A stretch of 64,000 nucleotides of DNA, from positions 124,001-188,000 of the IMG/VR virus record IMGVR_UViG_3300012931_000759. The stretch is one strand, 5' to 3'. Position 1 is the first letter of the stretch. The number at the start of each line of letters is the position of its first letter. Positions 9,769-55,344 of this stretch are shown piece by piece. A program made the position numbers and the translations under genes. Below the pieces are notes generated by a model. The model did no database searches and was not told the DNA's origin. It saw only the letters and a list, made by a program, of their open reading frames with translations.

Positions 9769-10354
9769 ACAATGGAGAAAAATATTGCGAACCGATGAGG
9801 CCCGGTTTTTTGTCGGCCACGCCCTGGTCTATGGTCGCCGGGTTTGTGTCGATACTGCCAGCGGAGTCGGCATTGCCGACGTGTTGGAAAGGATGTCCGC
9901 TTTCCTGGACGGCTTCGCTCGCTGGCGGCACACTGATCCCATGTTTGGCACCGCCGACATGCGTCAGGAAGCGTACGCTGCCGCTATAGAGGGGATGAGG
10001 GCATACCGGACCGGATATTCGGCACAGCTATCTACATTTTTACACATGTATGTACGAAATCGCATGATTGACATCAGACGCGGACGCCAACCTATCCACA
10101 CGGAGCTTCCGGACATCCCTGTCCCACAGACCATGAGCCCGGAGGAGGTCATCGATCTCGCCAATGCGATCGGGGACCTTGGGGAACGATGGGAACGCAT
10201 CGCGCGCAGGCTGCTTATCGAGGGTGAGCGTGTGGGCGACGTGGCCCGCGAGGAGCAGATGTCCCCGTGGGGTCTAACACGCGCTCTTAGGAAGCGGATG
10301 GATTTCGTCAGGCGCCAGAGGTGTCAGGACGGCAAACTGACAGGAAAGTCATGA
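9734..10354 (+). CDS. Sigma-70-family (ECF-like) RNA polymerase sigma factor; true start uncertain and probably downstream
   Basis: Region 2-like DMRQEAY..LSTFLHMYVRNRMID; region 4-like HTH near the C-terminus. Confidence 0.75.
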   Translation: MISRTSASILGRQWRKILRTDEARFFVGHALVYGRRVCVDTASGVGIADVLERMSAFLDGFARWRHTDPMFGTADMRQEAYAAAIEGMRAYRTGYSAQLSTFLHMYVRNRMIDIRRGRQPIHTELPDIPVPQTMSPEEVIDLANAIGDLGERWERIARRLLIEGERVGDVAREEQMSPWGLTRALRKRMDFVRRQRCQDGKLTGKS

Positions 10355-12372
10355 AGAGCAAGGAAGCTGAACTTGAAGCCAAGGCCTGGTTGGCGGAACA
10401 CGCCGTCCTGCTGGGACCGGAGGAGTTGCCGTTCGAAGAGGAAAAGTTGGCTGAAGCTTTCGTGCTCCGTGATGGCAGCTGGCCTTTGCCGCGCCAAGTT
10501 GAGCACATGGGGCAGTTCGCTGAAATAGTGGACGAGGGAAGTTTCAATAGGGTAGTGGGCGAACCCAGCAACTGGCAGATAATCCTCGACAGGCCCGATC
10601 TGTACCATTATTGGATCCTGCCAAAAGCTGCCGTCATATTTGGTCGGACTTGGTTCGAGCGTGTACAGTGGAAAAACTCCATCAGACGTGGCGTTCCGTT
10701 CGCCCTGTTCAGTACGGACGAACGCAGGGTGGCCAAGGAGTCCGGTATTCAGCTCGCGGAAACCACGGCCGGACGCAGCATTGTGTACAAGATCGTTTCG
10801 CGCATCGAACACGCCATGGATGTGTACCTTGCCGGGGGCGGCCGTTCGAAATCCGATGATCGTATCAAACAGCCCGGCGGATACATCGTCGAATCTATAG
10901 CTAACGAATTTATACAAGATGCGGGCGCAGACACGGGGTATCGACTCCTTCGCGTCCGGGCCTGTCCAAATTGCCTTGCGGCTGGGCAGGGGCGTTCCAA
11001 GCGTCGCCAGGTCAAGCATGTCGTGGGAAACATCTATCAATGCGAACAGTGCGTGGACACTGTGCGCAACCTCGACTTGGCCATCGACAAGCATTATGCG
11101 AACGGCACGCCCGTTCCGTCGGGGATCCTGTCGGAGCGTGAACGTGCAAGCCATTTCCAGGAATTTTCGGCCGTGGTGTGCGTCTGTCCGAACCCGGCGT
11201 GCCGGGGTCGTTTTGTGCCGACCGACTGTGTCGAGGACCCCGGATGGTGGTCTACACCCGAGGGACGCCTGGCAAAGGAGGAATTGTCACGCATCCATCC
11301 GCTCAAGGGGACGCAGAGGTTCCGGGATCCGCCCAATGCCATGATGAAGTTGCCACTACAGTGTCCGGTTTGCGAAGAGAAGTTTACACCGGCGTCCGCT
11401 ATGGCGGTCTCGAACGGATTCAGGGGACAGTCCGGGAAGTTGACGGGCCTGCCATCTATGTTCGTGTGGGTGAAGCGCGAAGTACGTGCAATCGACCACG
11501 GCCAGGCCAATATCCATTCGGTTCTCAAGGACAGCTTGGTTGACTCTTTGTGCCTAGATCCGGCACGGCGCATAAGTGCTGAACAGCATGTACGCATATT
11601 GACTGGGGAATTGGCCATATATGCGCAAGCGTTGTCCGGACAGACGGCTCCCGCCATCGTGTCGCGCTGTTTCTGTGAGGCAGTGTCAGAATGGATGGCC
11701 AGACATCCGGAGGACGCATCGCGGTACTTTTTCGAATGGTCGTCCGTGGGGAAGGATGAGAAGCGCATAACCAAGGTCGCCAAGGGACGGGAGGTGGCCA
11801 TCCACCAGACGATTCTGTCGGCGTGGTTGGCCCGGATCCTGGCGCGGATGGACGAGATACGCCGGGCGAAAGGATCGAAGATTAGGACCTTGGATGACTT
11901 GAAGTGGTTCTGCCGCTCTCCGGCATACAACGGTGGGCCAAGATCGTCATTCGTGGCTGAGGTCGACGACGGGCTTCGCGTGCGTAACGCGAGTCGCATA
12001 GTGTCCATGGACGGCACTACCGACAAGCCGCGGATGGCGTGGGTGTTTTCCGTTCGTCGGATTGGTGCGAACGGAAAATCCGGTCCGGAGCTTGCGCCGC
12101 TCATAAGGTCGCGTGAGTGGCAAGTCATCTCAATGTCCAGGGAATCCGGCTTGGTTCCGGGGGATAAGGTCAAGGTCGTGGCGCTCATGATGCCCGGACA
12201 CCATTGCCATGCGCCGATCCAGAGGATAATTAGGTTGAGGACATCCCTCCTGTCCGCCATCATCGAACGGATCAGATCCGAGGAATCTATGGGCGAGACC
12301 GACACGGCGTTCTGGTGGGAATGGCAGAAACGTGCTGAGGCGGCCAGGAAGGCCACAGGTATTGGCATCTGA
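10351..12372 (+). CDS. Unknown multi-zinc-finger protein; paralogue of the central region of 50026..55344
   Basis: CPNC, CEQC, CPNPAC, CPVC; ATGA overlap with the sigma gene; colinear similarity to the later ORF. Confidence 0.8.
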   Translation: MKSKEAELEAKAWLAEHAVLLGPEELPFEEEKLAEAFVLRDGSWPLPRQVEHMGQFAEIVDEGSFNRVVGEPSNWQIILDRPDLYHYWILPKAAVIFGRTWFERVQWKNSIRRGVPFALFSTDERRVAKESGIQLAETTAGRSIVYKIVSRIEHAMDVYLAGGGRSKSDDRIKQPGGYIVESIANEFIQDAGADTGYRLLRVRACPNCLAAGQGRSKRRQVKHVVGNIYQCEQCVDTVRNLDLAIDKHYANGTPVPSGILSERERASHFQEFSAVVCVCPNPACRGRFVPTDCVEDPGWWSTPEGRLAKEELSRIHPLKGTQRFRDPPNAMMKLPLQCPVCEEKFTPASAMAVSNGFRGQSGKLTGLPSMFVWVKREVRAIDHGQANIHSVLKDSLVDSLCLDPARRISAEQHVRILTGELAIYAQALSGQTAPAIVSRCFCEAVSEWMARHPEDASRYFFEWSSVGKDEKRITKVAKGREVAIHQTILSAWLARILARMDEIRRAKGSKIRTLDDLKWFCRSPAYNGGPRSSFVAEVDDGLRVRNASRIVSMDGTTDKPRMAWVFSVRRIGANGKSGPELAPLIRSREWQVISMSRESGLVPGDKVKVVALMMPGHHCHAPIQRIIRLRTSLLSAIIERIRSEESMGETDTAFWWEWQKRAEAARKATGIGI

Positions 12373-12383
12373 AGGAGATTTTT

Positions 12384-13700
12384 ATGGAAGAGCAGGTAAG
12401 GAAGGACGAGATTGAACAGCAGCAATGGCATCATGTTGTGACTTTGGAGGACCTTGGTGGCCTGAAGAGGAAGTTGGGTGTGACCTACGACCAGGAGGCA
12501 GTTAAGATGGCTTTCGACAAGGCCAACCAGGCTGTTGGTAAGCGGGCGATGATAAATGGTTTTCGTCGCGGGAAGGCTCCGCAGGCCCTGGTGGCGAGAT
12601 TCTGTGCGAAGGAGATCGAGACTGCTGCGTCCAGTATGCTGGCGCAGGAAGGATATCTTCACGCTGTTTACGAGCACAAGCTGGCTGCGCTCACTGAGCC
12701 TAAGGTGGAGAATCCCAAGTTCAATACTGATGGGACATTCTCTTGCGAGATCGTGGTCGAGGTACGTCCGGCCATTACCCCGACGGGATACGTGGGGCTC
12801 AAGCTGTCGAAACCACCGATCGATCCCGGACGGACGGTAGATGGTCTGATGGCCGAGCTGCGTAGTAGGTTCGCGACATTTGAGGAGCGAGAGAAGGTTG
12901 CCCCAGGCATGACCGTGGTGGTTGACTATTCCTTGGCGGTCGACGGGAAGGAGGTAATGGCACACCAAGGAGTACCTTTCACAGTAAGTGAGTCCGGCAC
13001 ATTGCCACTTGGAGGTGTTCAGGTAGCGGGTCTCGGGAGCGACGGATCTGCCACCGCCAAGATGACCCTGCCTGTAGATTTCAAGGACCACGGTGGTAAG
13101 GAGGCCGAGGTGCGCGTCCAGGTCAGGAAGATCCTGGAGAGCGTGCCCCCGACCGACGAGGAGCTGGCGGTCCGGAATGGCCAGGCATCTATAGACGACC
13201 TGGCCCGTAACGTACAGCAGCAGGCTAACATAGAGGTTGGACACAGGATCCGCCAGGTGCTTGAGGAGCAGGTTGTCGACAACTTGCTATCGTCACACCA
13301 GTTCGAAGTCCCTGGCGACTGGATCGACCGCGAATCACAGTACCTCGTCAAGCAGCTCGGCATTACCAGCGAGATGGACAACAATACGAAGGAGGCGGTG
13401 CGACAGCTCGCCGAGCGCAACGTGAGGCGCTCCTTTATGCTGGATGCCGTCTACGATTCCGAACCTGGCCTCCGTGTGAAAACCGAGGAGGTGGAAACAG
13501 TTCTCGACCAGGAAGCTGCCAGGCAGAGCGTCCCCAAAACGCAGCTAAAAAGGATGCTGCTCAAGCAGGGGATGATGGACAGTGTAGTCGAGCTGGTTAA
13601 GGGTCGGAAGATCATGGATTTTCTGATCTCGAATGCCGAGATCTTAACTGCGGACAGTGAGTCCGCGTCACAGGGGGCCTCGGCCCCCGTGGAAGCGTAG
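12384..13700 (+). CDS. tig: Trigger factor-like ribosome-associated chaperone
   Basis: GFRRGKAP ribosome-binding signature; EVRP..; FKBP-like middle region; C-terminal chaperone domain; 438 aa. Confidence 0.85.
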   Translation: MEEQVRKDEIEQQQWHHVVTLEDLGGLKRKLGVTYDQEAVKMAFDKANQAVGKRAMINGFRRGKAPQALVARFCAKEIETAASSMLAQEGYLHAVYEHKLAALTEPKVENPKFNTDGTFSCEIVVEVRPAITPTGYVGLKLSKPPIDPGRTVDGLMAELRSRFATFEEREKVAPGMTVVVDYSLAVDGKEVMAHQGVPFTVSESGTLPLGGVQVAGLGSDGSATAKMTLPVDFKDHGGKEAEVRVQVRKILESVPPTDEELAVRNGQASIDDLARNVQQQANIEVGHRIRQVLEEQVVDNLLSSHQFEVPGDWIDRESQYLVKQLGITSEMDNNTKEAVRQLAERNVRRSFMLDAVYDSEPGLRVKTEEVETVLDQEAARQSVPKTQLKRMLLKQGMMDSVVELVKGRKIMDFLISNAEILTADSESASQGASAPVEA

Positions 13701-13709
13701 GAGGGCAAG

Positions 13710-40182: not shown

Positions 40183-40194
40183 TAAGGAGAATTC

Positions 40195-43100: not shown

Positions 43101-44451
43101 CCTGCTTGATGCCGCCACGGAGGGCGATGGGACGGTCAAGTCCAGTAAATACGGTACGGAATCTGTTGGTATCCGCTACACCACGGTATCCAAGCAACTG
43201 GCGGACGACATCCAAGAGATCGCCTTCAGGTGCGGCTATGCGCCCATCATGCGACGCGACCAGAATGGTCAAGGCAAGTGGTTCTGGGCGGTTGACTGGT
43301 CGAACACGTCTTATGGACATTTTCCCACGGTTTACGGCAATCGCAAAGCCAAGAGGAACGGTGGTGGTGCGACCTTCGAAAGGATTCCGTACAACGGCGA
43401 TGTGTTCTGTTTCGAAGTGCCAAACGGTCTGCTGGTGGTTCGGCGCAATGGGCATATCTCGATCCAGGGCAATTGTAAATTCGCGCAGGCCGACGACCTC
43501 ATCAACCCGATTACGTTGGTGAAGATCGGCGGCACGGGCGAGGGCGAGTTCCACCCGGACGACGCACAACTCGAGGCGTGGCGCAACGTTATCGAGGAGG
43601 CTCAGTACGACAAGAACTTCAAGATTGTTACTCACGCGGGCGTAGTGATCGAGCGCGTGGGATCCTCCGGAGCTGTTCTCGACATCAGCCAGGACATGGA
43701 TCTCATCATCAAGAACATCATGTGGGGTCTCATGGTACCGCACGCCGTGATCGACACTGAGAGCGCCGTGTATGCTTCGGCCTCCATTGGTCTAGAAGTA
43801 CTGCGGCAGCGATACTTCAACTTCCGCAACATGATAGCCAAGTGGTTGACGAACAAGATTTTCTCGCCCATCAGCGATCTCCAGGGATTCTATAGGGCGG
43901 AAGCTGGGTACAAGAAGCTAATCGTTCCCGAGGTCGAGTGGAACCACATGAACCTGTATGACCTACAGGATTACATCAGCAATGTCTCTAGCCTGGTGAC
44001 GGCAAAGCAGGTGTCTCTACAGACGCTGTACAGGAGCCTCGGACTCAATTACGAGGAGGAACGTCAGAAAATGCGCAAGGAGGCGATCAACGACGCTGTA
44101 CGCCAACGCGAGGAACAGGCGCTGTCCAGCATGTCCCTCCTGGAGCTTAGGTCTCTTGACCCCGAACGCGAGATCATGGAGTCTACGCAGGCGGCGCAGC
44201 CGATGGGAGGGCCCTCCATGGGCGCACCTGGTGCGCCGGGATCCGATATGGGCGCTCCGCCGATGGGTGGAGGGGCTCCCCCGATGGGCGGTGGAGGCGG
44301 CGGTCTTCCGGGAGGATTGCCCGAACTAGCCCCGCCGCCCGGTGAAGCAATGGCAGGGCCTGGTGGTGCCGGGGCACCACCTCCTGGGGGAGCAACCCCT
44401 CCGCTCGGACCGGGTGGGCCGGGGGCTCCCCCGGCAGGGCCAGGGAAGTAG
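40195..44451 (+). CDS. Portal protein (about 660 aa after splicing) with two inteins and a Pro/Gly-rich C-terminal tail
   Basis: Directly after terL; HPLVRNAI, YWKLGEAF, VSHLK..PYDVRGTS portal-like motifs. Confidence 0.8.
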   Translation: MVDQSRRATGRTPGPKVLRTSPKLANVLSPIRRGALQDEVENGIVREGAQYGGSMLRRGIAEPMPADLDKGLARGVWMEGGRPTSGKKAAEGSQALIAHSPSFRKQAAVGVMNGGVGSTAGAPVERLAPEVYSPLFVMANLNLPRDRITVNAWCFLPGTMVWMADGTRKPIEEICVGDMVLSGEGLPRRVTTVFRRHVDEEIVGLRVKNSQETVWCTTNHGFNAVKADAVRCHDKTTFVKCKPDGDGCFCSRCGRKDDPYVFGKVESGQLGERDILYMPVPKLEPVSNDPLLSNPEAIELLGYYAAEGFVAHNRVTFSLGSHEKQLAVRIEELVGKLFAEGQIHTRSDRSTEIYVDCSNAKLAAFVLRHCGQGSLTKRLSFELMSVEPGLLLRFLVAWLDGDGGQEKYNSGIFVGNTSSENLAWQMRMLCLRCGLVAHVFRAHSQKTMVSPTNGETYPAAPRYYVKIRGKSALKLAECFSSEFYRFAAIERSYERDGCCFIHKDKAIQWINTVKRSGYIGFVHNIEVEIDHTYVVGYGVSVRNCRNFFDLHPLVRNAITMHATYPISKISIRCQDKKVQQFFEDMIEEMDLLGALGDISLEYWKLGEAFPYAELDENTLKWKRIVVQNPDYIHVKKMVIASEPVISLRPDAVLQRLVMSNNPADVQLRKQIPQHIVYHVRRGENIPLDNFNVSHLKMLSSPYDVRGTSVIVAAFKDLMLYDKIRECFSIDSEIMTERGFKTYDEIKEDDRLATFNPATGIMEFQPYTARIKRRHDGDMCHFHGKKVDVLVTPNHRMWLAQSRSHGGGYHDFGIIEAQDVKKGYFYKLRCVADWVGKELKTISVLGHEMPAETYMRILGHLVAEGCIHYKNINNYKYKVGISQNLDQNELIFGHICQSMVDLARFCGKHLGTYDHRNTKGFSVNKPSEMRNWTISSKELAAHFAAEIGTNSHDKHLPRWVFDLSPRLLRILLDAATEGDGTVKSSKYGTESVGIRYTTVSKQLADDIQEIAFRCGYAPIMRRDQNGQGKWFWAVDWSNTSYGHFPTVYGNRKAKRNGGGATFERIPYNGDVFCFEVPNGLLVVRRNGHISIQGNCKFAQADDLINPITLVKIGGTGEGEFHPDDAQLEAWRNVIEEAQYDKNFKIVTHAGVVIERVGSSGAVLDISQDMDLIIKNIMWGLMVPHAVIDTESAVYASASIGLEVLRQRYFNFRNMIAKWLTNKIFSPISDLQGFYRAEAGYKKLIVPEVEWNHMNLYDLQDYISNVSSLVTAKQVSLQTLYRSLGLNYEEERQKMRKEAINDAVRQREEQALSSMSLLELRSLDPEREIMESTQAAQPMGGPSMGAPGAPGSDMGAPPMGGGAPPMGGGGGGLPGGLPELAPPPGEAMAGPGGAGAPPPGGATPPLGPGGPGAPPAGPGK
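40654..41823 (+). mobile_element. Portal intein 1 (390 aa) with LAGLIDADG domain
   Basis: CFLPGT start, CTTNH block B, LLGYYAAEG and WLDGDG, ends VRN before +1 Cys. Confidence 0.9.
42370..43473 (+). mobile_element. Portal intein 2 (368 aa) with LAGLIDADG domain
   Basis: CFSIDSEI start, VTPNH, LGHLVAEG and TEGDG, ends IQGN before +1 Cys. Confidence 0.9.
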
Positions 44452-46083: not shown

Positions 46084-49000
46084 ATGGCGTGGCCATCCCT
46101 TTCGCGACGCGCTTCCCCCGGCATATCCCCGGTGGCCCTGATGCGCCTGACGGAGATTGATGATCCTGATGAACTACTCAAAAAGTTCAACAGAGATGAT
46201 ATTATAGTAGAACATAAATACGATGGCTGGAAGGCGCAGATCATCAAGGACGGGGAAAAGGTCCGCATCTTCAGCAGGCGCGGCGAGGAGGTCACTGGGA
46301 ACTTCCCGGCGATCGCCAAGGAGATGGTTGGTCTTCCTGACGGTACCCTTGTCGAGGGCGAGCTGGTCTACTGGGACAAGGGCAAACAGGATGTGACGAA
46401 GGTAACGTCCCTTGCCGGAAGCTCGGTCGACAAGGCCTTGGAGAAAGTGAAGGGGCTGCCCGGCAAGATGAAGCTCCATATCTACGACATCCTGTGGCTC
46501 AAGGGCAAAAACGTGGCCGACAGACCCTTCTCCGAGAGGCGCAAGCTGCTTGAGTCGGCTGTGAAGACCTCCGATACGGTCCTCCTGACAAAGCAGTACC
46601 CTTTCGCCAAGTGGCAGAATGCCATGAACACGGCAGTCGGCCAAGGTGGCGAGGGCATCGTACTCAAGCTCAAAGGCACCAAGTACCAGTACAAGCCCAA
46701 GGGCGAGTCCGAGCCAAAACCAAAAGATACGATGTGGAAGTATAAGGGCGGGGCTGGCAAGCACGACTCCGACGACTATGTGGTCTACGGCACGACCAAG
46801 AGCAAGACCGGCAAGCTCATGGCGCAGTTCGGCCAGTACTACAAGGGCAAGCTGTACGCCATCAGCGAGATCGACAACTTCTCGGCCGAGAACGAAGCCG
46901 AGATCGAGAAGCGCCTGAAAAAGGGTCCGTTCGTCATCGAAATTGGTTTCCAGGAGCGCGTGCCGGGCGGGCTGCGGCACCAGAAGTTTCTCAGGTTTCG
47001 GGACGACAAAAAGCCCAAGGATGCCACCATGCACGAATTCCATGCGGAGCATATCGGCGAGTTCGAACCAGCCAAGATGGAGCGGAAAGCAATGTTTGCG
47101 CTGGCGGGTACTCCCGATCTCGCCAAACTTGTTACGACGCTGGAACGGGCGGTTGGAAAAACAGACCCCATGAAGACGGGACCGACAAGGATCGGCGACG
47201 TGGGTGGTGTGGATGGCGACAAACTGTTCCAGCTCGTATCCAAACTTGAATCGAACGGTAGGACAGATGTTGTAGGAGACGCTGGAACGTCCTTTGGACC
47301 GACACAAATTCATGGGCCCTACCTCCTGGCCAGGCTTGCTGGAATGTCCGGCGCGCAGGCGGCCACCGGCTTGTCGCCCGATGAGATGCGCAAACTCTCC
47401 TCTTCCTGGCTGGACACCCTGAGGCAGCTTCGCGGCGCGCGCGTTTGGAAAGAGGTTCCAGTAGATCAGGACGAGGCGCGGAGATTACCTAGGATCAAGC
47501 GCCTGGAGAAGACCTTTATCCGCAGGCCGGATATGGTCATCGAGCAGAGGGACGGCCGGTATGTCGGTCGCATCTTGGATCTGGACGCCCTGCGAAGCCT
47601 GGGCTTCGATGTCGACTCGCAGATCTTCAGGAACGCCTTGCGCAGGATCTACGCGGAGTACATCACCGACAATGTCGCACTTAGCGGCCTGGCCCAGGCC
47701 CATCTGGGCTCCTTGGCCCCCGAGGCCTTCTACAAGTTCAAAAGGCAGTTCAACCCCGCCGGTATCCGGAAGAACAAGCCCCTAGCATCCCTGCTGGAGA
47801 GGGCCTCAACTAGCGACCTAACCAGCAGGATCGCTGCCGTGGTCCGGATGGTCGAGAAATCCGGGTACGACACGACTGCGCCGGGCGCGTTCAGCATCCC
47901 GCAGCTGGTCTTCATCGCCAACGGGAGCGGTATAGGGCGGGTCCAGCAGTTCCTCATGGACAGGAAGCCCTTCGCGCCGGGGAACTTACACTACCTACAG
48001 AGCCCCAGGTTTAAAGCCGCCATGAGCGCCTTTGTGAAAAACGATCCCGATCTTCGTGGAATGGCCACCCAGCTGCTCGCCGGGCTTCCTTCCGGCGACG
48101 GCATAGCTGGCTTTAAGGGGGAGGTTGCCGCTCGCATCGCGGCGCTGCTCGGGGCGGACAGCGAAGAGATCAGCCGGTCCGATGCAGTGAGGATGTTAAC
48201 GTTCGCCGACGGCCATCCAGATCGAGGGCGTGGCCGCTATCCGCGCTGGAATCCGGCCCTCCAGGCCCGCGAGATCATGAACTTGGTCGACCGCTGGCTG
48301 AACTATGAGAACATCCGGCCAATTGACCTGAAGGCGGTGGGCGTGACGCTCATTCGCGTCGACAGGGAGCAGGATCCGCCAAAGCTCGTCCTCTGGATCA
48401 TGGGGGACATTCAGGCGCTACAACGCCTGCTGCCGAGAAAGATGTGGGGCATGCCCGTTGTTCTACACTCCGACATCCCGAGGGCGACAACGGAGCTACC
48501 GGCCGTCACGGAGTTCGAGGAGGAACCGACGCTCGTTGACGTGGAGTCAAGAATGCCGACTAAGCTGTTCCAGGAGTACAGTGATCTCCTGGTGCGGGTA
48601 CGCGCCGAACTAAAGAGGACGCACAGGCACGTTCCCGAGGATCAGCTAAGACGTACGGTCTTTCTACACATTGCCGAGGAGCTGGGATACGATCTCGGGG
48701 AGCTGGAGAGAACCCTGGGTGAGCACGCCTGGCTCAGATTCTCCCATTGGCAGCCTCCTTTGTCCAAGCTGGCGATGGGCAATCGTGGCGTGCTCGCGTT
48801 CCCTGGACAGTACGCTGAGGATATCAAATCCGGCAAGATGGAACGGACGATCAGGCCTGGTGACATGCCGGTCGAGCCGGAGGAAGTGGTAGACGCTATC
48901 ACCTATTCGGGAGGACCTATTTGCCGGATCAAGATTCTGCTTAAGGAGATCATGAGCCTGCCGCGTCTCGCCAAGGCGTTCGGCAAGCATGTGGCCAGGT

Positions 49001-49980
49001 CCCTCGAGCACCGTTTCGGGCCGGACAGGCGCTTTATGGTCATCCGTTTCACTCGCTTCGGGGAGCAGGATGCCGACGACGGTGAACTTGACGAGAAAAA
49101 GCGCGGCGAGATCCTGATCGACAAGGATGGGATCGAACTCACGCGCGGGCAGATCTACGACCACTACGCCAAACCAGCGATCCGCAAACAGATCATGTCC
49201 CGCATCAAAGGCAAGCCTGTGCTAGTCTATCTTGGTGTGGGCAAGAACGAGAAGATCTTGAAGCGCAACCATGACAGTAAACCCATCGTCATTTCCAGCG
49301 ATGACCCAAAAGGGGATGGAGACAGTGGAAATTACTGGTACTGGGTCAAACGTCGGCTATTGGCTATTCATCAAGTGTTCGGTACGAAAACAGGTATTGG
49401 TTTTGTCGACCTGGATCTACATGGCGGATACCCACTCGATAAGAGCAAGGAGTACGCTAGGAAGGCAGTTGCGGCCATCAAGGAAAAGTATGGCGTTCAG
49501 CCGAAGGTCTACCAGAGTGGCGGCACTGGGCTCCATGTGGAGTTTGAGCTTGGCAAGGAGGTTGGTATCGACGGCCTGCGCAAGGAGTTGCGTGAGCTGC
49601 TCGACAAACTGAACGAGGATTTCGAGGGCGCGACGACCGGCCTTGTGAAGGGAAAAGGTATGCGGACGGATGTGAGTACACTTCACAACAAGGGCAGCCT
49701 ACGTGTGCCTGGTTCATTGGGTGAAACTTGGGGCAAGATGAAAAAGTCTTTGTCCCAATCGACCGATGACGATTATCAGAATGGGCAATTTGGTGGCAAA
49801 TATTCGGACACTGGCCCATTTGGCGATGGTGGTTCTATTGTGCCTATGCCCTATCAGTCTTCGGCTCCCGAACAGGTCGGAGCTGCGACGGCCTCTGAGA
49901 GAATCAAGTTATTCCGAATTGTTGCGCAGCAGTACGATGATGAAGTGAAGCCTGGAACAATAGCTCCTGGAAAATTTTGA
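46084..49980 (+). CDS. Mosaic protein: ATP-dependent DNA ligase + lysozyme/transglycosylase-like + unknown + ASCH + LigD-type primase-polymerase
   Basis: EHKYDG, EGELV, YDIL, EGIVLK, LRH..F.RFRDDK; LESNG..GDAG.SFGPTQI; LAFPGQYAEDIKSGK..TIR; FVDLD, SGGTGLHV, RVPGS. Confidence 0.85.
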   Translation: MAWPSLSRRASPGISPVALMRLTEIDDPDELLKKFNRDDIIVEHKYDGWKAQIIKDGEKVRIFSRRGEEVTGNFPAIAKEMVGLPDGTLVEGELVYWDKGKQDVTKVTSLAGSSVDKALEKVKGLPGKMKLHIYDILWLKGKNVADRPFSERRKLLESAVKTSDTVLLTKQYPFAKWQNAMNTAVGQGGEGIVLKLKGTKYQYKPKGESEPKPKDTMWKYKGGAGKHDSDDYVVYGTTKSKTGKLMAQFGQYYKGKLYAISEIDNFSAENEAEIEKRLKKGPFVIEIGFQERVPGGLRHQKFLRFRDDKKPKDATMHEFHAEHIGEFEPAKMERKAMFALAGTPDLAKLVTTLERAVGKTDPMKTGPTRIGDVGGVDGDKLFQLVSKLESNGRTDVVGDAGTSFGPTQIHGPYLLARLAGMSGAQAATGLSPDEMRKLSSSWLDTLRQLRGARVWKEVPVDQDEARRLPRIKRLEKTFIRRPDMVIEQRDGRYVGRILDLDALRSLGFDVDSQIFRNALRRIYAEYITDNVALSGLAQAHLGSLAPEAFYKFKRQFNPAGIRKNKPLASLLERASTSDLTSRIAAVVRMVEKSGYDTTAPGAFSIPQLVFIANGSGIGRVQQFLMDRKPFAPGNLHYLQSPRFKAAMSAFVKNDPDLRGMATQLLAGLPSGDGIAGFKGEVAARIAALLGADSEEISRSDAVRMLTFADGHPDRGRGRYPRWNPALQAREIMNLVDRWLNYENIRPIDLKAVGVTLIRVDREQDPPKLVLWIMGDIQALQRLLPRKMWGMPVVLHSDIPRATTELPAVTEFEEEPTLVDVESRMPTKLFQEYSDLLVRVRAELKRTHRHVPEDQLRRTVFLHIAEELGYDLGELERTLGEHAWLRFSHWQPPLSKLAMGNRGVLAFPGQYAEDIKSGKMERTIRPGDMPVEPEEVVDAITYSGGPICRIKILLKEIMSLPRLAKAFGKHVARSLEHRFGPDRRFMVIRFTRFGEQDADDGELDEKKRGEILIDKDGIELTRGQIYDHYAKPAIRKQIMSRIKGKPVLVYLGVGKNEKILKRNHDSKPIVISSDDPKGDGDSGNYWYWVKRRLLAIHQVFGTKTGIGFVDLDLHGGYPLDKSKEYARKAVAAIKEKYGVQPKVYQSGGTGLHVEFELGKEVGIDGLRKELRELLDKLNEDFEGATTGLVKGKGMRTDVSTLHNKGSLRVPGSLGETWGKMKKSLSQSTDDDYQNGQFGGKYSDTGPFGDGGSIVPMPYQSSAPEQVGAATASERIKLFRIVAQQYDDEVKPGTIAPGKF

Positions 49981-50025
49981 ATATCAGTTTGTGTAAATAT
50001 TTGAGATCGCTCAACATTATGGAGT

Positions 50026-53000
50026 GTGGTGCTGATGGTCAGCCTTCGTAGACGAATCCTCATGCTGGTGGCCCCGAAAGGGTTCTTTGAACCCGAATAT
50101 TCGGCATCACGTGCCGTGTTTGCCGATAGGGGCATCGATGTGGCCGTGGCCACGGCCGGTAAGTCGGCTGTGAGTGCGCAGGGCACAACCATCAGGGTCG
50201 ACCTTGACGTAGCGGACGCTGACGCAAAGGACTTCGACGCACTGTTTGTGGTCGGCGGCAAAGGTATGATCGAGTTTTCGGACGACAAGGCCGCTAAGCG
50301 CATCCTGCGCAAGTTTGTGCGCGTCGGCAAGCCGGTAGCCATGATCTGTCACGCCCCGCTCTTGGCGGCAAAGGCGAAGGTTGCTGCCGGTCGGCAGATG
50401 ACCGGATGGCCAGAGATCCGTCCCGATATGGTGGCCTCCGGAGCCAAGTGGACCGGCATGCCGGTGGAGCGGGACGGCGATCTGTTTACAGCCGTGGGAC
50501 CGGAGGATGCCGAATCCCTCGCCGACATCCTGGTCCGGCGGATGGATGGTGCCCCGACGCTCTCCGAGGCAATGTTAGATGACAACGCCGCCATGCGCAA
50601 ATTGGCGCGCCTGTGGCGCGCCGCAGCAAGGCTCGACAAGCCGATGACGGACGAGGAGGCCGAGCGCTGGTTGACGGAGTTTGAGCGCAGGGACGAGGGC
50701 GAGGAGGAGCCACCTTCTGAACCTACCACTCCCAAGCCGGTTCTAGCACCCGCGCCGAAATCGGTCCCGGCGCTCGCCGCCAAACCCAAACCTGAACCAG
50801 AGTTTACGCCCGACCCAGAGAGGCGCGATCAGATCACACATAAGCCGAAAAACGAATGGAATATTGTGGTGGAGCTTCGGCCACCCCGCACAGACGGCGG
50901 CTGGCCGGAACTTCCCGAGACCCCTCCAGTCGGATTCCCGTTCCCAGCTGAGGCGCTGAAGGACAGCCCTTCCATCAGGGCGCTATTCCAGAAGCCTGAG
51001 ACCTGGCGCGCACTCAAAGAGATTGCCGCCAATCCCAACAAGAGTGGTACAATACAGTCATACCTCGTGCCGACGCTAGTGCTCGTTATCGGCAAGGCCT
51101 GGTGGGAGATCAACAAGCGTCGCAAGCAGCTCGGCAACGCGCCGTTCGGCCTTTTCTCGTCCGACGAGTACAAGACCATACAGGACGCCAATGTCCCCAT
51201 GGAGGAGACGCAGATTGGACGGGCCTTCATTGCGCTGATCAACTGGCAGGTTACCAAGATACTCCAGTTCTACCTCGCCACCGGCAAGATCGAGAATGCT
51301 CGGCTGGATGGCTATATCTATGACGCCCTGAACAAGCACATGGTGAACGATGCGGGCAAGCGGCACGGATTCGAACCCAAGCGCCAGCCCGCCTGTGCCT
51401 ACTGTCGCAGCAAGCGCGTCATAGAGACGACGCCTCCGTTCCTTTCGCAGATCGGGACGCACACTGTCCAGGAAAGGAATCTGACGCGAAGCCGTCCCCT
51501 GTTCAAGTGCCCAACCTGCGAGGATCTGATCGAGACCAAGGAACAGGAGCTTCGCCTGAAGGAACAGGGTGTCCGCAACGCGGAAGAGAGTTTGCGCGAT
51601 ATAGCCAAGAATGTCCGGAACACCAAGGACAATCTGACCAAGGATCCGGACAGTGCCGAGCTGAAGCAGCGCCTGGTGAACTATGAGGCTATGTTGGCCA
51701 GCTACCGCCCACAGGTAGAGGAACTTGCCAAGGAGCGCAACACCCTGAAGGGCGAGATCCAGAACAGGCGCAATATGATAGGCGTGCCTTATTCGCATCT
51801 CTCTTGTATTAACGAGGCCTGCCCAGGCGCCGCTATACCCCTCACGTTCGTGGACTGGGACAACTCTTTCTGGAAGACGCCTGCTGGAGATGTGGCCAGG
51901 CGTGACCTAGCCAGCTTCTACCACATCGAGAAGAGTCCCGAAGGTCAGAAGGCTGAGGATGCGCCACAGGAAAGCGTTCAGCCTACATCTGAGCGCGCCG
52001 GGAAAAAACCGCCCCCGTGGATGTGGCACATTCCGTTCCGCTGCCCGTTTGATGGGCTTGTTTTCACGCCGCATGAGGCATTCGGGAAGGGGCGTGTCGG
52101 CGAGGACGGGACAAGACTTGGTGGCTTGTTTGTTAACCCGCCTCGCGCCACTAGGTGGTGGAAGCCGATGTCTCTCGAGCAGCAGCGGATGCCCGATGAC
52201 GAGGGCCAGAAGCAGCGCATCGAGGAGATCCGGTCGTTGACCGGTATCGAAACCACCACGGACTCGCCGGATTTCCTGCGCTCTCAGGAGATGAAACAGG
52301 AGAACGCCTGGCTGGCGGACCGCCTGCGCGAGGATATCCTCCGGCAGAGGGAAAATTTTATGAAAGAGCGCGGAACGCTTGAGGGCCATCGCGAGGTCAA
52401 GCTCCGCAGGACTATGTTCGACGCTTTGCTTGAATGGGCATATCTACATCCCATACATCTTGTGGCATTCTATAGCGCGCGTTCCCAGGCTACACAGAAG
52501 CCGCAGACGCACGTGCCAGTCGGCACCGAGCCAGTTGTGGACGGAAAGAGTGGGGAAGTCAAGGAGCATCTCGACGAAAAGAACATTAAGATGTCCCCAA
52601 AGCAGGCCGAGCGGATCATCTCCGCAATCATACAGGTGTGGTTCGAGAAGATGCTGGCCGAGAAGGATGGGCTGACCATCCTCAAAGGTAGGCCGGGCAA
52701 AGGGCGTTCAGGCAAGCTCACGGGACAGGGCAACTACCTGGCCATCAAGGAAGTCGACGGCGTAGAGCCGGACGGCTTTTTTGTCACGACGGTACAGCGA
52801 GCGTTGGACGGGCAGCTCGAAGCGCTTTGTAATCTCCGCACAACCAGCCCTAAGACTCGCGGGGCCGGATACTACCCCGCTCCATGGATGGCGCTTGTAC
52901 AGGGTATCTGGGACTACGACGGCCCAGCCGAGCGAATGGGTATCTCTATGCCCCTCGTGGAGGGGCAGAAGCTGGTCGCGGGCAAGAGAAGCCATCTCCA

Positions 53001-55344
53001 CGAAATGGAGACCCACAACAGCCATGGCATCCGATTCGACCCCGAAACGACGCTGAAGGAGGGGGATCGCATTGTTGTGAAGGCCCTGCTGATGCCGCGT
53101 AACTCCTCCTGGCCTCCCAATAAGTTCGTTAGCCATATCCGGCAAGGTCTGAAGTGGGACATCGGCGATGCCAAGGTCTACTACTCGGCGCTGCGCCGCC
53201 GCCAGAAACCTAAACCCTCGGACGAGCAGGTTATGGCCTTCTGGACGAAAAAGATGCAAGAAGCCAACATGACCGAGAAACTTGAGAAGTTTTATGAGAC
53301 GGTATACGACAGGCTGCGCCACAAGGAGGACCTCTCGGCTTTCGAGATAAGGCTGTTGGAGCAGTTTGAGCAAGCCAAGGAACAGGAGGCGTCCGACACC
53401 ATGGTTTCCGAAGCCAAGGATCCCCTCGCAAAATACCAGGGCAAGCGCGAATTCGACAAGACCACGGAGCCGAAAGGTAAGGAGTCGGAGGGTGGGAACA
53501 GGTACCGCTTTGTCATCCAACTACACCATGCCAAGAAAGCGGGTGACCATTACGATTTACGCCTAGAGAACGACGAGGGCGCATTGTCGTCGTGGAGTAT
53601 CCCGAAGCACCGGCTACCCAAGGGCAAGGAGAAGTTGCTCGCTGTCAGGACCGAAGACCATCCGGTCGAATACCTGAAGTTCAAGGGCGAAATCCCGGCG
53701 GGCGAGTATGGGGTCGGCACGATGGAGATCCACGACTCGGGAACCTACGAGGAGATCGAGGCCGGCAAGACCAAGATCGTCTTCTGCTTGAAGGGAAAGA
53801 AGGAGAAGGGGGCCTACAAGTTATTCCGGGCAGGCGAGGGAAACAAATGGATGGTGATGGAACATACAGAAAATAAACAGGAAAAGAAAGAGGCAGCCTG
53901 TGGCTCGAGTGTAACTCTATTCTCCAAACGAATTGGCAGTGTTCCGTTGTCAAAGATGGCGGCGCACAGTGGTGCGATGTTGGCTCTCATGGCTCCGTCG
54001 GCCATTGCCAGGAAGATGCGCAAGGCCAAGATGGTAGAGGACGAAGATCTGTCTGATACCCTTCACATGACTCTGTTGTACCTCGGGAAAGCTGCTGACC
54101 TCAGCAAAGAGACGCTGGAAGCAGTCCGGAAGGCGGCAGAGAAGGTGTGCGAGCGGCACGACCCGCTAAAGATGGGTGTTTCGGGTGCCGGGACATTCAC
54201 TCCGGAAGAAGATGGCACTCCGGTATACGTGGTACCTAATGCGAAGGGATTGAGCGCTCTACAGGCCGACCTGGAGAATGTTATCGGCAGCATCGTCGAC
54301 CTGCCCTCTGAGCACGGCTGGGTTCCGCATATGACTGTATGCTACTGCCGCGACGGGAAACCGGAACTCCCAGACCTGACGGAGAAACTGGAGTGGACCG
54401 CTGATAAGGTGCGTCTACAGGCTGGTGACGAGAAGATCGCGGACATTCCCATTGGCCGCAGGAAAAAGGGTGGAAGCGAGCTTCCGCTGTCCAGGCGGGC
54501 TGCGCTGGAGCGGTTGCCGATAGCCGCTGATCCTGTAATGTGGACGGATGAACAGTTGGTGGAAGCCGTCCGTCGACCGGAACTGTTCGGAAACGACAAA
54601 GATCGGTATCGGGCAGCAGTCGAACAGTTGGCCAAACGCGGTCTGGTGAAAAAGGTGGAGCCAACAGACATCGGCGAATGGCGTGAGCGCGGTTGGTGGC
54701 TACTAATGTGGGCGGGGATCCCACTCGCTTTCTACAACAACGATGCTGCTGCCAGTATGGCTAAACGGCTGCTCGCAGAGGATTTCGCCAAGGACGGCAC
54801 GCAGCCTATTGCTGCGCGTAAGTTTGATCCGATCCATTCCCGTCTGCGTTGGCAACTCGACGAGGTCATGGATCTGGGCCCGGCCGAGGACTACGAGGAG
54901 GCTGATCACCGGCGCGGTAGGGCAGGAACGGCCGTGGATGAACTGGTTACGCATCCTATGTACGCAAAACGGCGCAGGGAATTCGCCGAGAAGGCATTGA
55001 ACATCGCCAAGGCTCCCGCTGGTTTCAGACCGTTCAAAGAGTCGGTTCCCTCAGGTGCGCGACCAACCGAAACTAACGCTGACGCAGCTGAGGCTCGCAT
55101 CACGGACATGCGGTTCGGTAACACCCTGCCGGAGTTTACTGGACCGCTGGTGGATTCCCAGGAGGCTGCGAAGGACGCCGGTGACGAACTGGTCGAGGAC
55201 ACCGCCAAGAGACTTGCCAAGCGGCTGGAGGCCGAGCGGGCCGGTCTAGATCCTGAAAAACTGGCGGACGACGATGCGCTGGAACTAGCCCTGATCGAGC
55301 CGGACGAGGTTCCGCTCTCGAAGCGGACGGAAACATACCAATAA
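50026..55344 (+). CDS. Mosaic protein: DJ-1/PfpI + multi-zinc-finger domain (paralogue of 10351..12372) + LigD 3'-phosphoesterase + 2H phosphoesterase + unknown domain
   Basis: AMICHAP; FVIQLHHA..HYDLRLE..SWSIPK..AVRTEDHP..Y..F.GEIP.GEYG.G; LHMTL and PHMTV. Confidence 0.85.
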   Translation: MVLMVSLRRRILMLVAPKGFFEPEYSASRAVFADRGIDVAVATAGKSAVSAQGTTIRVDLDVADADAKDFDALFVVGGKGMIEFSDDKAAKRILRKFVRVGKPVAMICHAPLLAAKAKVAAGRQMTGWPEIRPDMVASGAKWTGMPVERDGDLFTAVGPEDAESLADILVRRMDGAPTLSEAMLDDNAAMRKLARLWRAAARLDKPMTDEEAERWLTEFERRDEGEEEPPSEPTTPKPVLAPAPKSVPALAAKPKPEPEFTPDPERRDQITHKPKNEWNIVVELRPPRTDGGWPELPETPPVGFPFPAEALKDSPSIRALFQKPETWRALKEIAANPNKSGTIQSYLVPTLVLVIGKAWWEINKRRKQLGNAPFGLFSSDEYKTIQDANVPMEETQIGRAFIALINWQVTKILQFYLATGKIENARLDGYIYDALNKHMVNDAGKRHGFEPKRQPACAYCRSKRVIETTPPFLSQIGTHTVQERNLTRSRPLFKCPTCEDLIETKEQELRLKEQGVRNAEESLRDIAKNVRNTKDNLTKDPDSAELKQRLVNYEAMLASYRPQVEELAKERNTLKGEIQNRRNMIGVPYSHLSCINEACPGAAIPLTFVDWDNSFWKTPAGDVARRDLASFYHIEKSPEGQKAEDAPQESVQPTSERAGKKPPPWMWHIPFRCPFDGLVFTPHEAFGKGRVGEDGTRLGGLFVNPPRATRWWKPMSLEQQRMPDDEGQKQRIEEIRSLTGIETTTDSPDFLRSQEMKQENAWLADRLREDILRQRENFMKERGTLEGHREVKLRRTMFDALLEWAYLHPIHLVAFYSARSQATQKPQTHVPVGTEPVVDGKSGEVKEHLDEKNIKMSPKQAERIISAIIQVWFEKMLAEKDGLTILKGRPGKGRSGKLTGQGNYLAIKEVDGVEPDGFFVTTVQRALDGQLEALCNLRTTSPKTRGAGYYPAPWMALVQGIWDYDGPAERMGISMPLVEGQKLVAGKRSHLHEMETHNSHGIRFDPETTLKEGDRIVVKALLMPRNSSWPPNKFVSHIRQGLKWDIGDAKVYYSALRRRQKPKPSDEQVMAFWTKKMQEANMTEKLEKFYETVYDRLRHKEDLSAFEIRLLEQFEQAKEQEASDTMVSEAKDPLAKYQGKREFDKTTEPKGKESEGGNRYRFVIQLHHAKKAGDHYDLRLENDEGALSSWSIPKHRLPKGKEKLLAVRTEDHPVEYLKFKGEIPAGEYGVGTMEIHDSGTYEEIEAGKTKIVFCLKGKKEKGAYKLFRAGEGNKWMVMEHTENKQEKKEAACGSSVTLFSKRIGSVPLSKMAAHSGAMLALMAPSAIARKMRKAKMVEDEDLSDTLHMTLLYLGKAADLSKETLEAVRKAAEKVCERHDPLKMGVSGAGTFTPEEDGTPVYVVPNAKGLSALQADLENVIGSIVDLPSEHGWVPHMTVCYCRDGKPELPDLTEKLEWTADKVRLQAGDEKIADIPIGRRKKGGSELPLSRRAALERLPIAADPVMWTDEQLVEAVRRPELFGNDKDRYRAAVEQLAKRGLVKKVEPTDIGEWRERGWWLLMWAGIPLAFYNNDAAASMAKRLLAEDFAKDGTQPIAARKFDPIHSRLRWQLDEVMDLGPAEDYEEADHRRGRAGTAVDELVTHPMYAKRRREFAEKALNIAKAPAGFRPFKESVPSGARPTETNADAAEARITDMRFGNTLPEFTGPLVDSQEAAKDAGDELVEDTAKRLAKRLEAERAGLDPEKLADDDALELALIEPDEVPLSKRTETYQ

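What the first reader, a model, noticed from the sequence alone, without database searches (positions are those of the whole stretch)
10351..53260. Unknown ~600-aa multi-zinc-finger protein present twice: stand-alone beside a sigma factor and embedded in the polyprotein
Colinear similarity is seen between ~10560-12330 and ~50995-53260: ILPKAAVIFGRTWFE / LVPTLVLVIGKAWWE; PFALFSTDE..LAETTAGR / PFGLFSSDE..MEETQIGR; GYIVESIANEFIQDAG / GYIYDALNKHMVNDAG; ACPNC / ACAYC; CPNPAC.G / CINEAC.G; WWSTPEG / FWKTPAG; PLQCP..FTP / PFRCP..FTP; GDKVKVVALMMP / GDRIVVKALLMP. The stand-alone copy is translationally coupled to a sigma gene, and the GYI..I.N..I.D segment loosely resembles sigma region 2. Inference: a novel transcription-factor family with an expressed copy and a virion-delivered copy for immediate-early transcription.
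Basis: partly seen in the sequence, partly recalled or inferred. Interest (0 to 1): 0.78.

Follow-up and report, generated by a model that had tools for sequence, protein, structure and literature searches.

The report
Sigma-like zinc-ribbon module, duplicated in huge phages
A huge phage carries two ancient copies of a previously undescribed ~650-residue protein module, one free-standing next to a sigma-factor gene and one built into a giant DNA-repair-like protein of the head gene cluster; its first domain looks by predicted structure like the core-binding, DNA-melting domain of bacterial sigma factors, so it may redirect host transcription, but this is not proven.

Summary
ORF A (window 10351-12372, 673 aa) and the middle of ORF B (50062-55344, 1760 aa) are full-length paralogs. 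BLASTP gives 3e-14 for the first ~190 residues. The profile-profile comparison gives E 1.4e-37 over 616 columns. The window lies in a 340-kb virus record.

The module has about 100 representatives, all from metagenomes or phage contigs. None matches Pfam or PHROGs, or any PDB sequence. Stand-alone and embedded forms split on one branch with 100/100 support. Both occur about 40 kb apart in relatives, including a complete 442-kb genome.

A keeps the order sigma, A, trigger factor, with an ATGA overlap between sigma and A. B lies between the portal gene and the protease and capsid genes. In relatives it is fused into 2.7-3.8-kaa proteins: DNA ligase ... DJ-1, module, LigD 3'-phosphoesterase.

Best reading (~0.4): a divergent sigma-like factor that engages RNA polymerase or promoter DNA. 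Main rival (~0.25): a DNA-end-binding partner of the LigD-like enzymes. Virion delivery is inferred from gene position only.

The parts
9734..10354 (+). Small ECF-like sigma factor gene (sigma2 plus a C-terminal HTH). Its stop overlaps the start of ORF A.
   Evidence: Pfam Sigma70_r2 at 27 bits against a cut-off of 24. ATGA overlap. An ortholog lies directly upstream of A in most related loci.
10351..12372 (+). ORF A, the stand-alone copy of the module (673 aa).
   Evidence: AlphaFold model with mean pLDDT 82.7.
10468..10941 (+). A domain D1 (residues 40-197): helical, sigma1.2/sigma2-like fold, and the part best conserved between A and B.
10942..11478 (+). A domain D2 (residues 198-376): two predicted zinc sites, C205/C208/C231/C234 and C279/C284/C338/C341. 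The domain is strongly basic.
   Evidence: Invariant Cys columns. Mean net charge +10.8.
11479..11559 (+). A linker (residues 377-403): low-confidence, acidic and not conserved between the families.
   Evidence: pLDDT below 50 for residues 378-403. Charge and conservation.
11560..12369 (+). A C-terminal half: helical domain D3 (404-512), small beta-barrel D4 (513-620) and terminal helices (621-673).
12384..13700 (+). Phage trigger-factor homolog, always the gene directly after A.
   Evidence: Pfam Trigger_N and Trigger_C. Synteny.
46084..49980 (+). 1298-aa protein with an N-terminal ATP-dependent DNA ligase domain. In relatives it is fused to ORF B in a single giant ORF.
   Evidence: Pfam DNA_ligase_A_M. 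PDB ligase matches. Fused architectures.
50062..55344 (+). ORF B (1760 aa): DJ-1/PfpI, embedded module, LigD 3'-phosphoesterase, 2H phosphoesterase and an unassigned C-terminal region.
50887..53196 (+). Embedded copy of the module inside ORF B (P0020 residues ~276-1045). It is longer than A because of inserts, among them a long predicted coiled coil between the two zinc sites.
   Evidence: hhalign E 1.4e-37 over 616 columns. Coordinates. Domain lengths.
53518..53829 (+). LigD_N 3'-phosphoesterase domain of ORF B, the most constant fusion partner found downstream of the module.
   Evidence: Pfam E 1.3e-25. Same order in 14 further proteins.
54046..54417 (+). 2H (LigT-like) phosphoesterase domain of ORF B.
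   Evidence: Pfam 2_5_RNA_ligase2 at E 6.6e-16.
38332..44451 (+). Large terminase (38332-40182) and intein-containing portal (40195-44451), which open the head module that contains ORF B.
   Evidence: The same order (terminase, portal..., giant protein) is seen in L010.

Best explanation
The two regions are ancient paralogs of a new four-part protein module. It consists of a sigma1.2/sigma2-like helical domain, a basic double zinc-ribbon domain, an acidic flexible linker, and a helical domain plus a small beta-barrel. It is found in a clade of huge phages in which no RNA polymerase of their own was detected.

I propose that the module engages host RNA polymerase or promoter DNA through the sigma2-like domain, as sigma domain 2 binds the beta' clamp helices and the melted -10 strand. 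The zinc-ribbon domain would add nucleic-acid or polymerase contacts.

The stand-alone copy A is made from the same operon as a small ECF-like sigma factor. It would act with, or alongside, that sigma during infection.

The embedded copy B is part of a giant head-module protein that also carries DNA ligase, DJ-1, LigD 3'-phosphoesterase and 2H domains. I infer that this protein is packaged and enters the cell with the DNA, so that a polymerase-engaging module and end-repair enzymes are present before any phage gene is expressed.

Shown: the paralogy, the conservation, the architecture, the synteny and the fold resemblance. Inferred: binding to RNA polymerase, the direction of the effect (activation or displacement of host sigma), packaging and timing.
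For: Paralogy and age:
- hhalign E 1.4e-37 over the full length.
- About 100 cluster representatives.
- A single split between stand-alone and embedded lineages with 100/100 support.
- Both copies lie about 40 kb apart in a complete 442-kb genome and in two further records.

Fold:
- The D1 model has pLDDT 93.4 and pTM 0.88.
- Group-1 sigmas align from region 1.2 to the end of region 2.
- Phage sigma factors appear at ranks 3, 5 and 23 in BFVD.
- A viral cluster named 'Sigma factor for late transcription' is a top shape match in the ESM Atlas, TM 0.47.

Context:
- There is an ATGA overlap with a sigma gene.
- A sigma-like ORF lies directly upstream of A in 7 of about 10 distinct loci, down to 34% identity.
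- No RNAP beta, beta' or T7-type RNAP was detected in the own record, and no beta in three relatives.
- A is strongly basic, and the linker is acidic and disordered.

Precedent: AR9 gp226 and phiKZ gp68 are accepted as sigma homologs on structure alone, with vanishing sequence similarity (PMC9209446). D29 gp53 displaces host sigma by mimicry (bioRxiv 10.64898/2026.10.05.756390).

Head-module position of B: terminase and portal lie upstream. A protease-domain protein, a lysin-domain protein and the major head protein (PHROG E 3e-76) lie downstream.
Against: - Foldseek against PDB and AlphaFold DB gives nothing significant.
- There is no sequence-level sigma signal. Pfam scans of the full protein and of 83 D1 sequences are negative. 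So are the PHROGs scans, the profile search against PDB and hhalign against a phage sigma profile (probability 0.2%); that sigma profile was narrow.
- No sigma4-like domain was found.
- The operon already encodes a complete sigma2+sigma4 sigma, so A is not needed as the sigma itself.
- The sigma gene is missing upstream of A in L009 and three other loci.
- B's fusion partners are DNA-end enzymes, not transcription proteins.
- A sits among recombination and replication genes.
- The RNAP searches used Pfam models, which can miss the very divergent multisubunit RNAPs of jumbo phages, and the own record is only 84% complete.
Confidence: 0.4

Rival explanations
1. The module binds DNA ends or single-stranded DNA and acts as an accessory of a phage LigD-like end-healing and sealing machine, filling a Ku-like slot. 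In B it would hold the genome ends, for example the cohesive ends left by a GpA-type terminase, for the fused ligase, 3'-phosphoesterase and polymerase-like domains after injection. A would do the same for the Mre11/Rad50, Cas4-like nuclease and replication proteins encoded around it. On this view the sigma2-like fold is used only for its ability to bind single-stranded DNA.
For: In every embedded protein that carries LigD_N, that domain lies downstream of the module. This holds for 15 proteins: P0020, P0023, P0024, P0026, P0069, P0073, P0076, P0078, P0079, P0085, P0086, P0103, P0110, P0119 and P0122; P0115 has the same order for the module's C-terminal part only. In P0079 an intein and in P0103 a long spacer intervene. 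Most of the longest ones also carry an N-terminal DNA ligase, and two have weak LigD Prim-Pol hits. A lies in a conserved block: Prim-Pol, Mre11, Rad50, dNMP kinase, Cas4-like nuclease, A..., Pol III alpha. No Ku homolog is found in the genome. The protein is basic and has zinc ribbons. Language-model features of the C-terminal half weakly point to OB-fold nucleic-acid binders (scores below the tool's lead threshold).
Against: The order of domains in the giant protein is inherited from one ancestor. It therefore counts as a single event and need not mean cooperation, particularly if the giant protein is a string of independent cargo domains. No fold search returned Ku, an OB-fold end-binder or any repair factor above noise. 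The only coherent structural signal is to sigma2. The tight operon with a sigma gene is left unexplained.
Confidence: 0.25
2. A is a partner or anti-sigma-type regulator of the sigma factor encoded directly upstream. It would bind that sigma rather than RNA polymerase. B would be a delivered version that sequesters a host sigma or otherwise shuts off host transcription.
For: The order sigma gene then regulator gene, with overlapping stop and start, is the classic sigma/anti-sigma arrangement (established knowledge of ECF sigma operons). It is seen here and conserved. The protein has zinc sites. The upstream sigma is complete in itself.
Against: There is no H-x3-C-x2-C zinc anti-sigma motif at the first zinc site (sequence). 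No anti-sigma fold appears among the matches. A 650-residue four-domain cytoplasmic protein is unlike known anti-sigmas. A persists where no sigma gene is adjacent. B has no cognate sigma next to it.
Confidence: 0.12
3. The module is a structural or assembly element with no role on nucleic acids. It could be an internal head or neck-associated scaffold in B, with A as a soluble assembly paralog whose folding is helped by the neighbouring trigger factor. The sigma2 resemblance would then be a coincidence of helical packing.
Against: The barrel matches cover only about 70 residues of a very common fold. A is encoded in the replication and transcription block, not with structural genes. The invariant zinc ligands and the strong positive charge fit nucleic-acid binding better. 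The homogeneity of the sigma2 hit list in three libraries is hard to ascribe to chance.
Confidence: 0.13

Closest known systems
T4 gp55 (late sigma factor) and other minimal phage sigma factors
   Different: gp55 is about 185 aa and a single domain. Here the sigma2-like domain is the first quarter of a ~650-aa protein with two zinc ribbons, a helical domain and a beta-barrel. No sequence similarity to sigma region 2 was detected, and no partner like gp33 or a sliding clamp was identified.
AR9 gp226 and phiKZ gp68 (promoter-specificity subunits of jumbo-phage non-virion RNA polymerases)
   Same: [quoted passage not shown] The layout here is similar: N-terminal half, acidic disordered linker, C-terminal half.
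   Different: Those proteins serve phage-encoded multisubunit RNA polymerases, and none was detected in this clade. They have no zinc ribbons according to the paper search ('zinc' occurs 0 times). Neither protein appeared among the 50 matches listed by any PDB fold search. No embedded, head-module copy is known for them.
N4 virion RNA polymerase and the crAss-like virion RNAP polyproteins (giant packaged proteins that start early transcription)
   Same: The idea is the same: a giant multidomain protein encoded with virion genes, packaged and injected so that transcription can begin at once (established knowledge of N4 and crAss-like phages). B sits in a 1.8-3.8-kaa protein in the head module.
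   Different: Those proteins contain a polymerase catalytic domain. Here there is no polymerase, only a putative polymerase-engaging module together with DNA-end repair enzymes. Packaging is not demonstrated.
Bacterial LigD/Ku non-homologous end joining, as exploited by mycobacteriophages Corndog and Omega (which encode Ku)
   Same: The giant protein unites the LigD activities: ligase, 3'-phosphoesterase and a weak Prim-Pol hit. Use of end joining to circularise an incoming phage genome has precedent (my knowledge of Pitcher et al. 2006, not re-read here).
   Different: There is no Ku. The domain order differs from LigD. The module has no counterpart in LigD or Ku.
Mycobacteriophage D29 gp53-gp52 (sigma-displacing module)
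   Same: A phage protein without recognisable sigma sequence is proposed to occupy the sigma-binding surface of host RNA polymerase, and the module occurs in fused or split gene architectures.
   Different: It is an unrelated small protein. I made no structural or sequence comparison with it, so it is only a functional analogy.

Membership tests
Sigma-70 family sigma factors | Region 2 (2.1-2.4) recognisable at sequence level (Pfam PF04542 or profile similarity) | tested here: not met
   There is no PF04542 hit for full-length A or B or for any of 83 D1 sequences at E up to 10. hhalign of the D1 profile against a phage sigma profile gives probability 0.2%. The profile search against PDB returns no sigma.
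Sigma-70 family sigma factors | Sigma2 three-dimensional fold | tested here: inconclusive
Sigma-70 family sigma factors | Sigma4 helix-turn-helix domain for the -35 element and beta-flap | tested here: not met
   There is no PF04545 hit in A or B. No sigma4 match to residues 200-673 appears in the fold searches.
Sigma-70 family sigma factors | Binds RNA polymerase core and confers promoter-specific initiation | not testable with these tools
   This needs biochemistry or a co-fold with the unknown host's polymerase.
Structure-only phage sigma homologs (T4 gp55, AR9 gp226, phiKZ gp68) | Sigma2-like core without detectable sequence similarity, in a phage transcription context | tested here: inconclusive
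Zinc-binding anti-sigma factors (ZAS) | H-x3-C-x2-C motif in a four-helix anti-sigma domain, encoded downstream of the cognate sigma | tested here: not met
   The gene order is met. There is no His four residues before C205 (sequence). No anti-sigma domain appears among the fold matches.
Ku / LigD end-joining proteins | Ku beta-barrel ring fold, or LigD ligase, polymerase or phosphoesterase domains within the module itself | tested here: not met
   The module has no Pfam hit. There is no Ku in the genome. No Ku or LigD structures appear among the fold matches. The LigD domains lie outside the module.
Virion-packaged, ejected giant proteins (N4 vRNAP type) | Gene located within the head or virion morphogenesis module | tested here: met
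   The order is terminase, portal..., ligase protein, B..., protease-domain protein, lysin-domain protein, major head protein. The same position after the portal is seen in L010.
Virion-packaged, ejected giant proteins (N4 vRNAP type) | Protein physically present in virions and delivered to the host | not testable with these tools
   This needs virion proteomics of a cultured relative.

The most novel reading that the evidence does not exclude
Huge phages that lack their own RNA polymerase package a sigma-like module in the capsid, as part of a giant LigD-like pilot protein. On injection this module captures the host RNA polymerase core, or displaces host sigma, at the entering genome end, while the fused ligase and phosphoesterases secure the DNA ends. 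A free paralog, made together with a small phage sigma, then takes over for later transcription. This would be the first virion-delivered sigma-type factor, and a third route to immediate-early transcription beside host-sigma promoters and packaged RNA polymerases.
Probability: 0.15. Interest if true: 0.85.

Novelty: new variant of a known kind. Interest (0 to 1): 0.62.

Why it matters
Huge phages with genomes of 300-460 kb are known almost only from metagenomes, and how they take over host transcription is largely unknown. This clade seems to rely on the host polymerase.

A conserved pair of large paralogs with a sigma2-like domain is a concrete, testable candidate for that takeover. One paralog is tied to a sigma gene and the other sits in a probable capsid-cargo protein.

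If the module binds RNA polymerase, it extends the small set of sigma relatives that only structure can recognise (gp55, gp226, gp68). It would also be the first case of such a factor being delivered with the DNA.

If instead it binds DNA ends, it defines the missing end-binding partner of a phage-borne LigD-like repair machine.

Either way, the family is a good target for expression, structure determination and binding assays. About 100 cluster representatives are known and none has an annotation.

Tried and rejected
Sequence searches that gave nothing:
- Pfam and PHROGs scans of A returned no family.
- megablast and tblastn against 50,697 phage records found nothing.
- Profile searches against PDB sequences gave only noise-level zinc-finger hits for the full protein, and nothing for D1.
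- Pfam and PHROGs scans of 83 D1 sequences at E up to 10 showed no recurring family.
- hhalign of D1 against the neighbouring sigma gene and against a 20-sequence phage sigma alignment gave probabilities of 0.2-0.3%. That sigma profile was narrow (24-100% identity).

Structure searches that gave nothing:
- Foldseek of both models against PDB, AlphaFold DB clusters and Swiss-Prot gave no hit with E below 0.1.
- The ESM Atlas searches by sequence relied on the Atlas's own poor model (pLDDT 0.41) and are uninformative.

Ideas considered and dropped:
- The module could be a hidden LigD polymerase (AEP) or Ku domain. No fold support was found.
- A could be a ZAS anti-sigma. The motif is absent.
- The beta-barrel could mark a neck protein. 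The match covers only about 70 residues of a common fold.

Other dead ends:
- The genome search could not reach the JGI, ENA or Logan contigs behind L005-L011. I used IMG/VR loci instead.
- Literature searches found no description of this family or of the giant ligase-phosphoesterase head-module protein.


Full report
**1. What the window is**

The window is bases 124001-188000 of a 340,392-bp IMG/VR virus record that CheckV estimates to be 84% complete. All long ORFs lie on the + strand and GC is 50-63%. It is therefore a huge phage known only from a metagenome.

**2. The observation**

ORF A runs from the ATG at 10351 to 12372 (673 aa, identical to database protein P0001). ORF B is the 1772-codon frame 50026-55344, and the called gene starts at 50062 (1760 aa, P0020).

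- BLASTP of the two gives E 3e-14 for A 51-228 against B-ORF 290-464. Nothing else is significant on its own.
- I collected 18 homologs of A (33-77% identity) and 10 homologs of the B region.
- The profile-profile comparison gives probability 99.95% and E 1.4e-37. Its 616 aligned columns run from A 39 to the C-terminus and across B-region 8-777.
- A six-frame search of the whole record finds just these two copies.

**3. Anatomy of the module**

An AlphaFold2 model of A, built with the 28-sequence joint alignment, has mean pLDDT 82.7. Its pTM is 0.44, as expected for several independently placed domains. The parts are:

- an A-specific acidic N-terminal pair of helices (1-39);
- D1, helical (40-197);
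- D2 (198-376) with two zinc sites;
- a low-confidence acidic linker (377-403);
- D3, helical (404-512);
- D4, a small beta-barrel (513-620);
- terminal helices (621-673).

Seven Cys are invariant in all 28 sequences: C205, C208, C231, C234, C279, C284 and C338. The eighth ligand position is Cys in A and Asp or Glu in B. D1 is the part best conserved between the families (25% identity, 19% of columns conserved across families). D2 of A carries a mean net charge of +10.8. B is longer mainly because of inserts in D2, including a long coiled-coil-like stretch between the zinc sites.

**4. Distribution and history**

An exhaustive profile search of 1.84 billion cluster representatives finds 102 proteins at E up to 1e-3, and 77 at E up to 1e-30. 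They fall into two architectures:

- stand-alone proteins of about 600-690 aa;
- modules embedded in proteins of 1300-3800 aa.

A maximum-likelihood tree of D1 (83 sequences) separates the 52 stand-alone from the 31 embedded sequences on one branch with 100/100 support. This fits one ancient duplication, or one fusion.

Both forms occur about 40 kb apart, as in the window, in a complete 442-kb genome and in two further IMG/VR records. No member has a Pfam, PHROGs or source annotation beyond 'hypothetical protein'. The family is absent from 50,697 deposited phage genomes.

**5. Context of the stand-alone copy**

The genes around A are, in order:

- Prim-Pol
- Mre11-like phosphoesterase
- Rad50/SbcC-like ATPase
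- dNMP kinase
- a CHB_HEX_C/Fn3_assoc protein
- Cas4-like PD-(D/E)XK nuclease
- a small sigma factor (9734-10354)
- A
- a trigger-factor homolog (12384-13700)
- a GIY-YIG endonuclease
- DNA polymerase III alpha

The sigma ORF's TGA overlaps A's ATG as ATGA, and a Shine-Dalgarno-like AGGA lies upstream.

The block is syntenic in relatives at 52% and 39% identity, again with a 4-bp overlap in the latter. An HMM of the upstream sigma finds an ortholog ending at the start of A in 7 of about 10 distinct loci, down to 34% identity of A. It is absent in L009 and in L026-L028. The trigger-factor gene follows A in every locus long enough to show it.

The upstream sigma has a region 2 and a C-terminal helix-turn-helix, so it is a complete minimal sigma.

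**6. Context of the embedded copy**

ORF B carries these domains:

- DJ-1/PfpI (ORF residues 9-169)
- the module
- LigD 3'-phosphoesterase (1165-1268)
- a 2H phosphoesterase (1341-1464)
- about 300 unassigned residues

The gene just upstream (46084-49980) starts with an ATP-dependent DNA ligase domain.

In more distant relatives these two genes are one ORF of 2752-3824 aa. The order is ligase ... (ASCH, weak LigD Prim-Pol) ... DJ-1, module, LigD_N. In 15 proteins LigD_N lies downstream of the module; in P0079 an intein and in P0103 a long spacer intervene.

The genomic position is constant: large terminase, portal, two or three small genes, then the giant protein. Beyond the window come three further genes:

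- a 1326-aa protein with a prohead-protease domain;
- a 1216-aa protein with an endolysin-like domain;
- the major head protein (PHROG 2522, E 3e-76).

B therefore lies inside the head-morphogenesis module among other giant enzyme-bearing proteins. That is where capsid cargo and ejection proteins are usually encoded. This is positional evidence only; packaging is not shown.

**7. What the fold says**

Foldseek finds nothing significant for the whole model in PDB or AlphaFold DB.

The Foldseek-independent VIA-align search of 48,161 PDB representatives gave two coherent groups:

- residues ~60-197 against many sigma-factor sigma2 domains;
- residues ~520-616 against small beta-barrels of phage neck and tail-tube proteins and MexA-type adaptors.

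In the second-look runs, group-1 sigmas align from region 1.2 to the end of region 2. These include the Thermus aquaticus sigma2 crystal structures bound to -10 single-stranded DNA.

Two other libraries agree. Foldseek on BFVD lists phage sigma factors at ranks 3, 5 and 23 (E 4e-3 to 0.5). Its best hit is an uncharacterised 211-aa phage protein (E 2.4e-6). The ESM Atlas shape search lists a viral cluster named 'Sigma factor for late transcription' (TM 0.47 over 110 residues).

The limits of this evidence are:

- The sigma hits are not independent of each other, because they share one fold.
- Sequence profiles give no support.
- No sigma4 was found.

I conclude that sigma2 is the closest known fold to D1 (about 0.7 that the fold resemblance is real). 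Homology and shared function remain open.

**8. Does the phage need such a factor?**

Pfam models for RNAP beta, beta' and T7-type RNAP find nothing in the own record, although the T7-type model rang in none of the control genomes, so that negative carries no weight. The beta model also finds nothing in three relatives, including the complete 442-kb genome.

The genome has two ORFs above the Sigma70_r2 cut-off and a further ORF with a sigma4 hit. The clade thus seems to depend on redirecting host RNA polymerase.

The caveat is that very divergent jumbo-phage polymerases can escape Pfam.

**9. Mechanism**

My best explanation (0.4) is that the module engages host RNA polymerase or promoter DNA through the sigma2-like D1, with help from the basic zinc-ribbon domain. 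A would act together with the co-translated small sigma. B would be a cargo version that arrives with the DNA as part of a pilot protein that also repairs and seals DNA ends. Whether it activates phage promoters or displaces host sigma cannot be told.

Precedents:

- AR9 gp226 and phiKZ gp68 are accepted sigma homologs with vanishing sequence similarity. They have an N-terminal domain, a flexible linker and a C-terminal domain (PMC9209446).
- D29 gp53 displaces SigA by mimicry.
- N4 and crAss-like phages inject giant transcription proteins (established knowledge).

The main rival (0.25) takes the fusion partners at face value. On that view the module is the DNA-end or single-strand binding partner of a LigD-like machine. 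This fits the constant order of module then LigD_N, the position of A among recombination genes and the absence of Ku. It has no structural support and leaves the sigma operon unexplained.

Both context arguments rest on arrangements inherited from single ancestors, so neither weighs much.

The lesser rivals are a sigma-partner or anti-sigma role (0.12) and a purely structural role (0.13).

**10. Novelty and verdict**

The family is real, ancient within its clade, undescribed and structurally well predicted.

If the sigma-like reading holds, it is a new variant of a known kind (divergent phage sigma-type factors) with an unprecedented second, capsid-cargo copy.

Its interpretation is partly supported and remains a hypothesis that direct binding assays could settle.

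Noticed in passing
window 40195-44451: The portal gene (PHROG portal hits) is interrupted by an intein with Hint and LAGLIDADG domains, giving a 1418-aa ORF. The relative P0079 has an intein inside the giant protein just before its LigD_N domain.
   Followed up: partly
window 12384-13700: The phage encodes a trigger-factor homolog (Trigger_N plus Trigger_C). It always lies directly after ORF A in related huge phages, and this is the most constant neighbour of A. It may chaperone the giant proteins.
   Followed up: partly
window 55668-61855: Four homing-endonuclease-like ORFs are packed into the head module: 55668-56864 (four DUF4379 treble-clef fingers, HNH-like), 58150-59016 (NUMOD3 plus Vsr-like), 60141-60815 (GIY-YIG plus NUMOD3) and 61199-61855 (HNH/endonuclease VII). 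Another GIY-YIG ORF lies at 14231-14884, before Pol III alpha.
   Followed up: no
window 46084-55344 and relatives P0069, P0073, P0079, P0110: Together the two adjacent giant genes carry DNA ligase, DJ-1/PfpI, LigD 3'-phosphoesterase and 2H phosphoesterase. In relatives they are a single 2.7-3.8-kaa ORF with ASCH and weak LigD Prim-Pol hits. This is a phage-borne LigD-like tool kit encoded in the head module, with no Ku in the genome.
   Followed up: partly
L029 (G000:C1:188001-206000) 1622-5602, 8201-11851, 15147-16172: Just beyond the window lie a 1326-aa protein with a prohead-protease domain, a 1216-aa protein with an endolysin-like domain, and the major head protein (PHROG 2522, E 3e-76). 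The head module is unusually rich in giant enzyme fusions.
   Followed up: partly
window 61852-63345: A 497-aa ORF has weak hits to dual-specificity or tyrosine phosphatase domains and to a peptidoglycan-binding domain, inside the head module.
   Followed up: no
window 24283-24840; G000:C1:313366-314010 (L003 1366-2010): There are further sigma-related genes. One is a 185-aa ORF with a Sigma70_r4 hit at the cut-off. The other is a canonical 214-aa sigma2+sigma4 sigma factor elsewhere in the genome, so the phage has at least two or three sigma-type genes.
   Followed up: partly
window 24971-27799: GC drops to about 0.50 at 26-28 kb, against 0.55-0.63 elsewhere, inside a 942-aa ORF of unknown function.
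   Followed up: no
P0103 (residues 1959-2031) and P0105 (2707-2776): Two distant giant proteins that contain the module also carry a PcfJ-like domain (a conjugative-plasmid family of unknown function).
   Followed up: no
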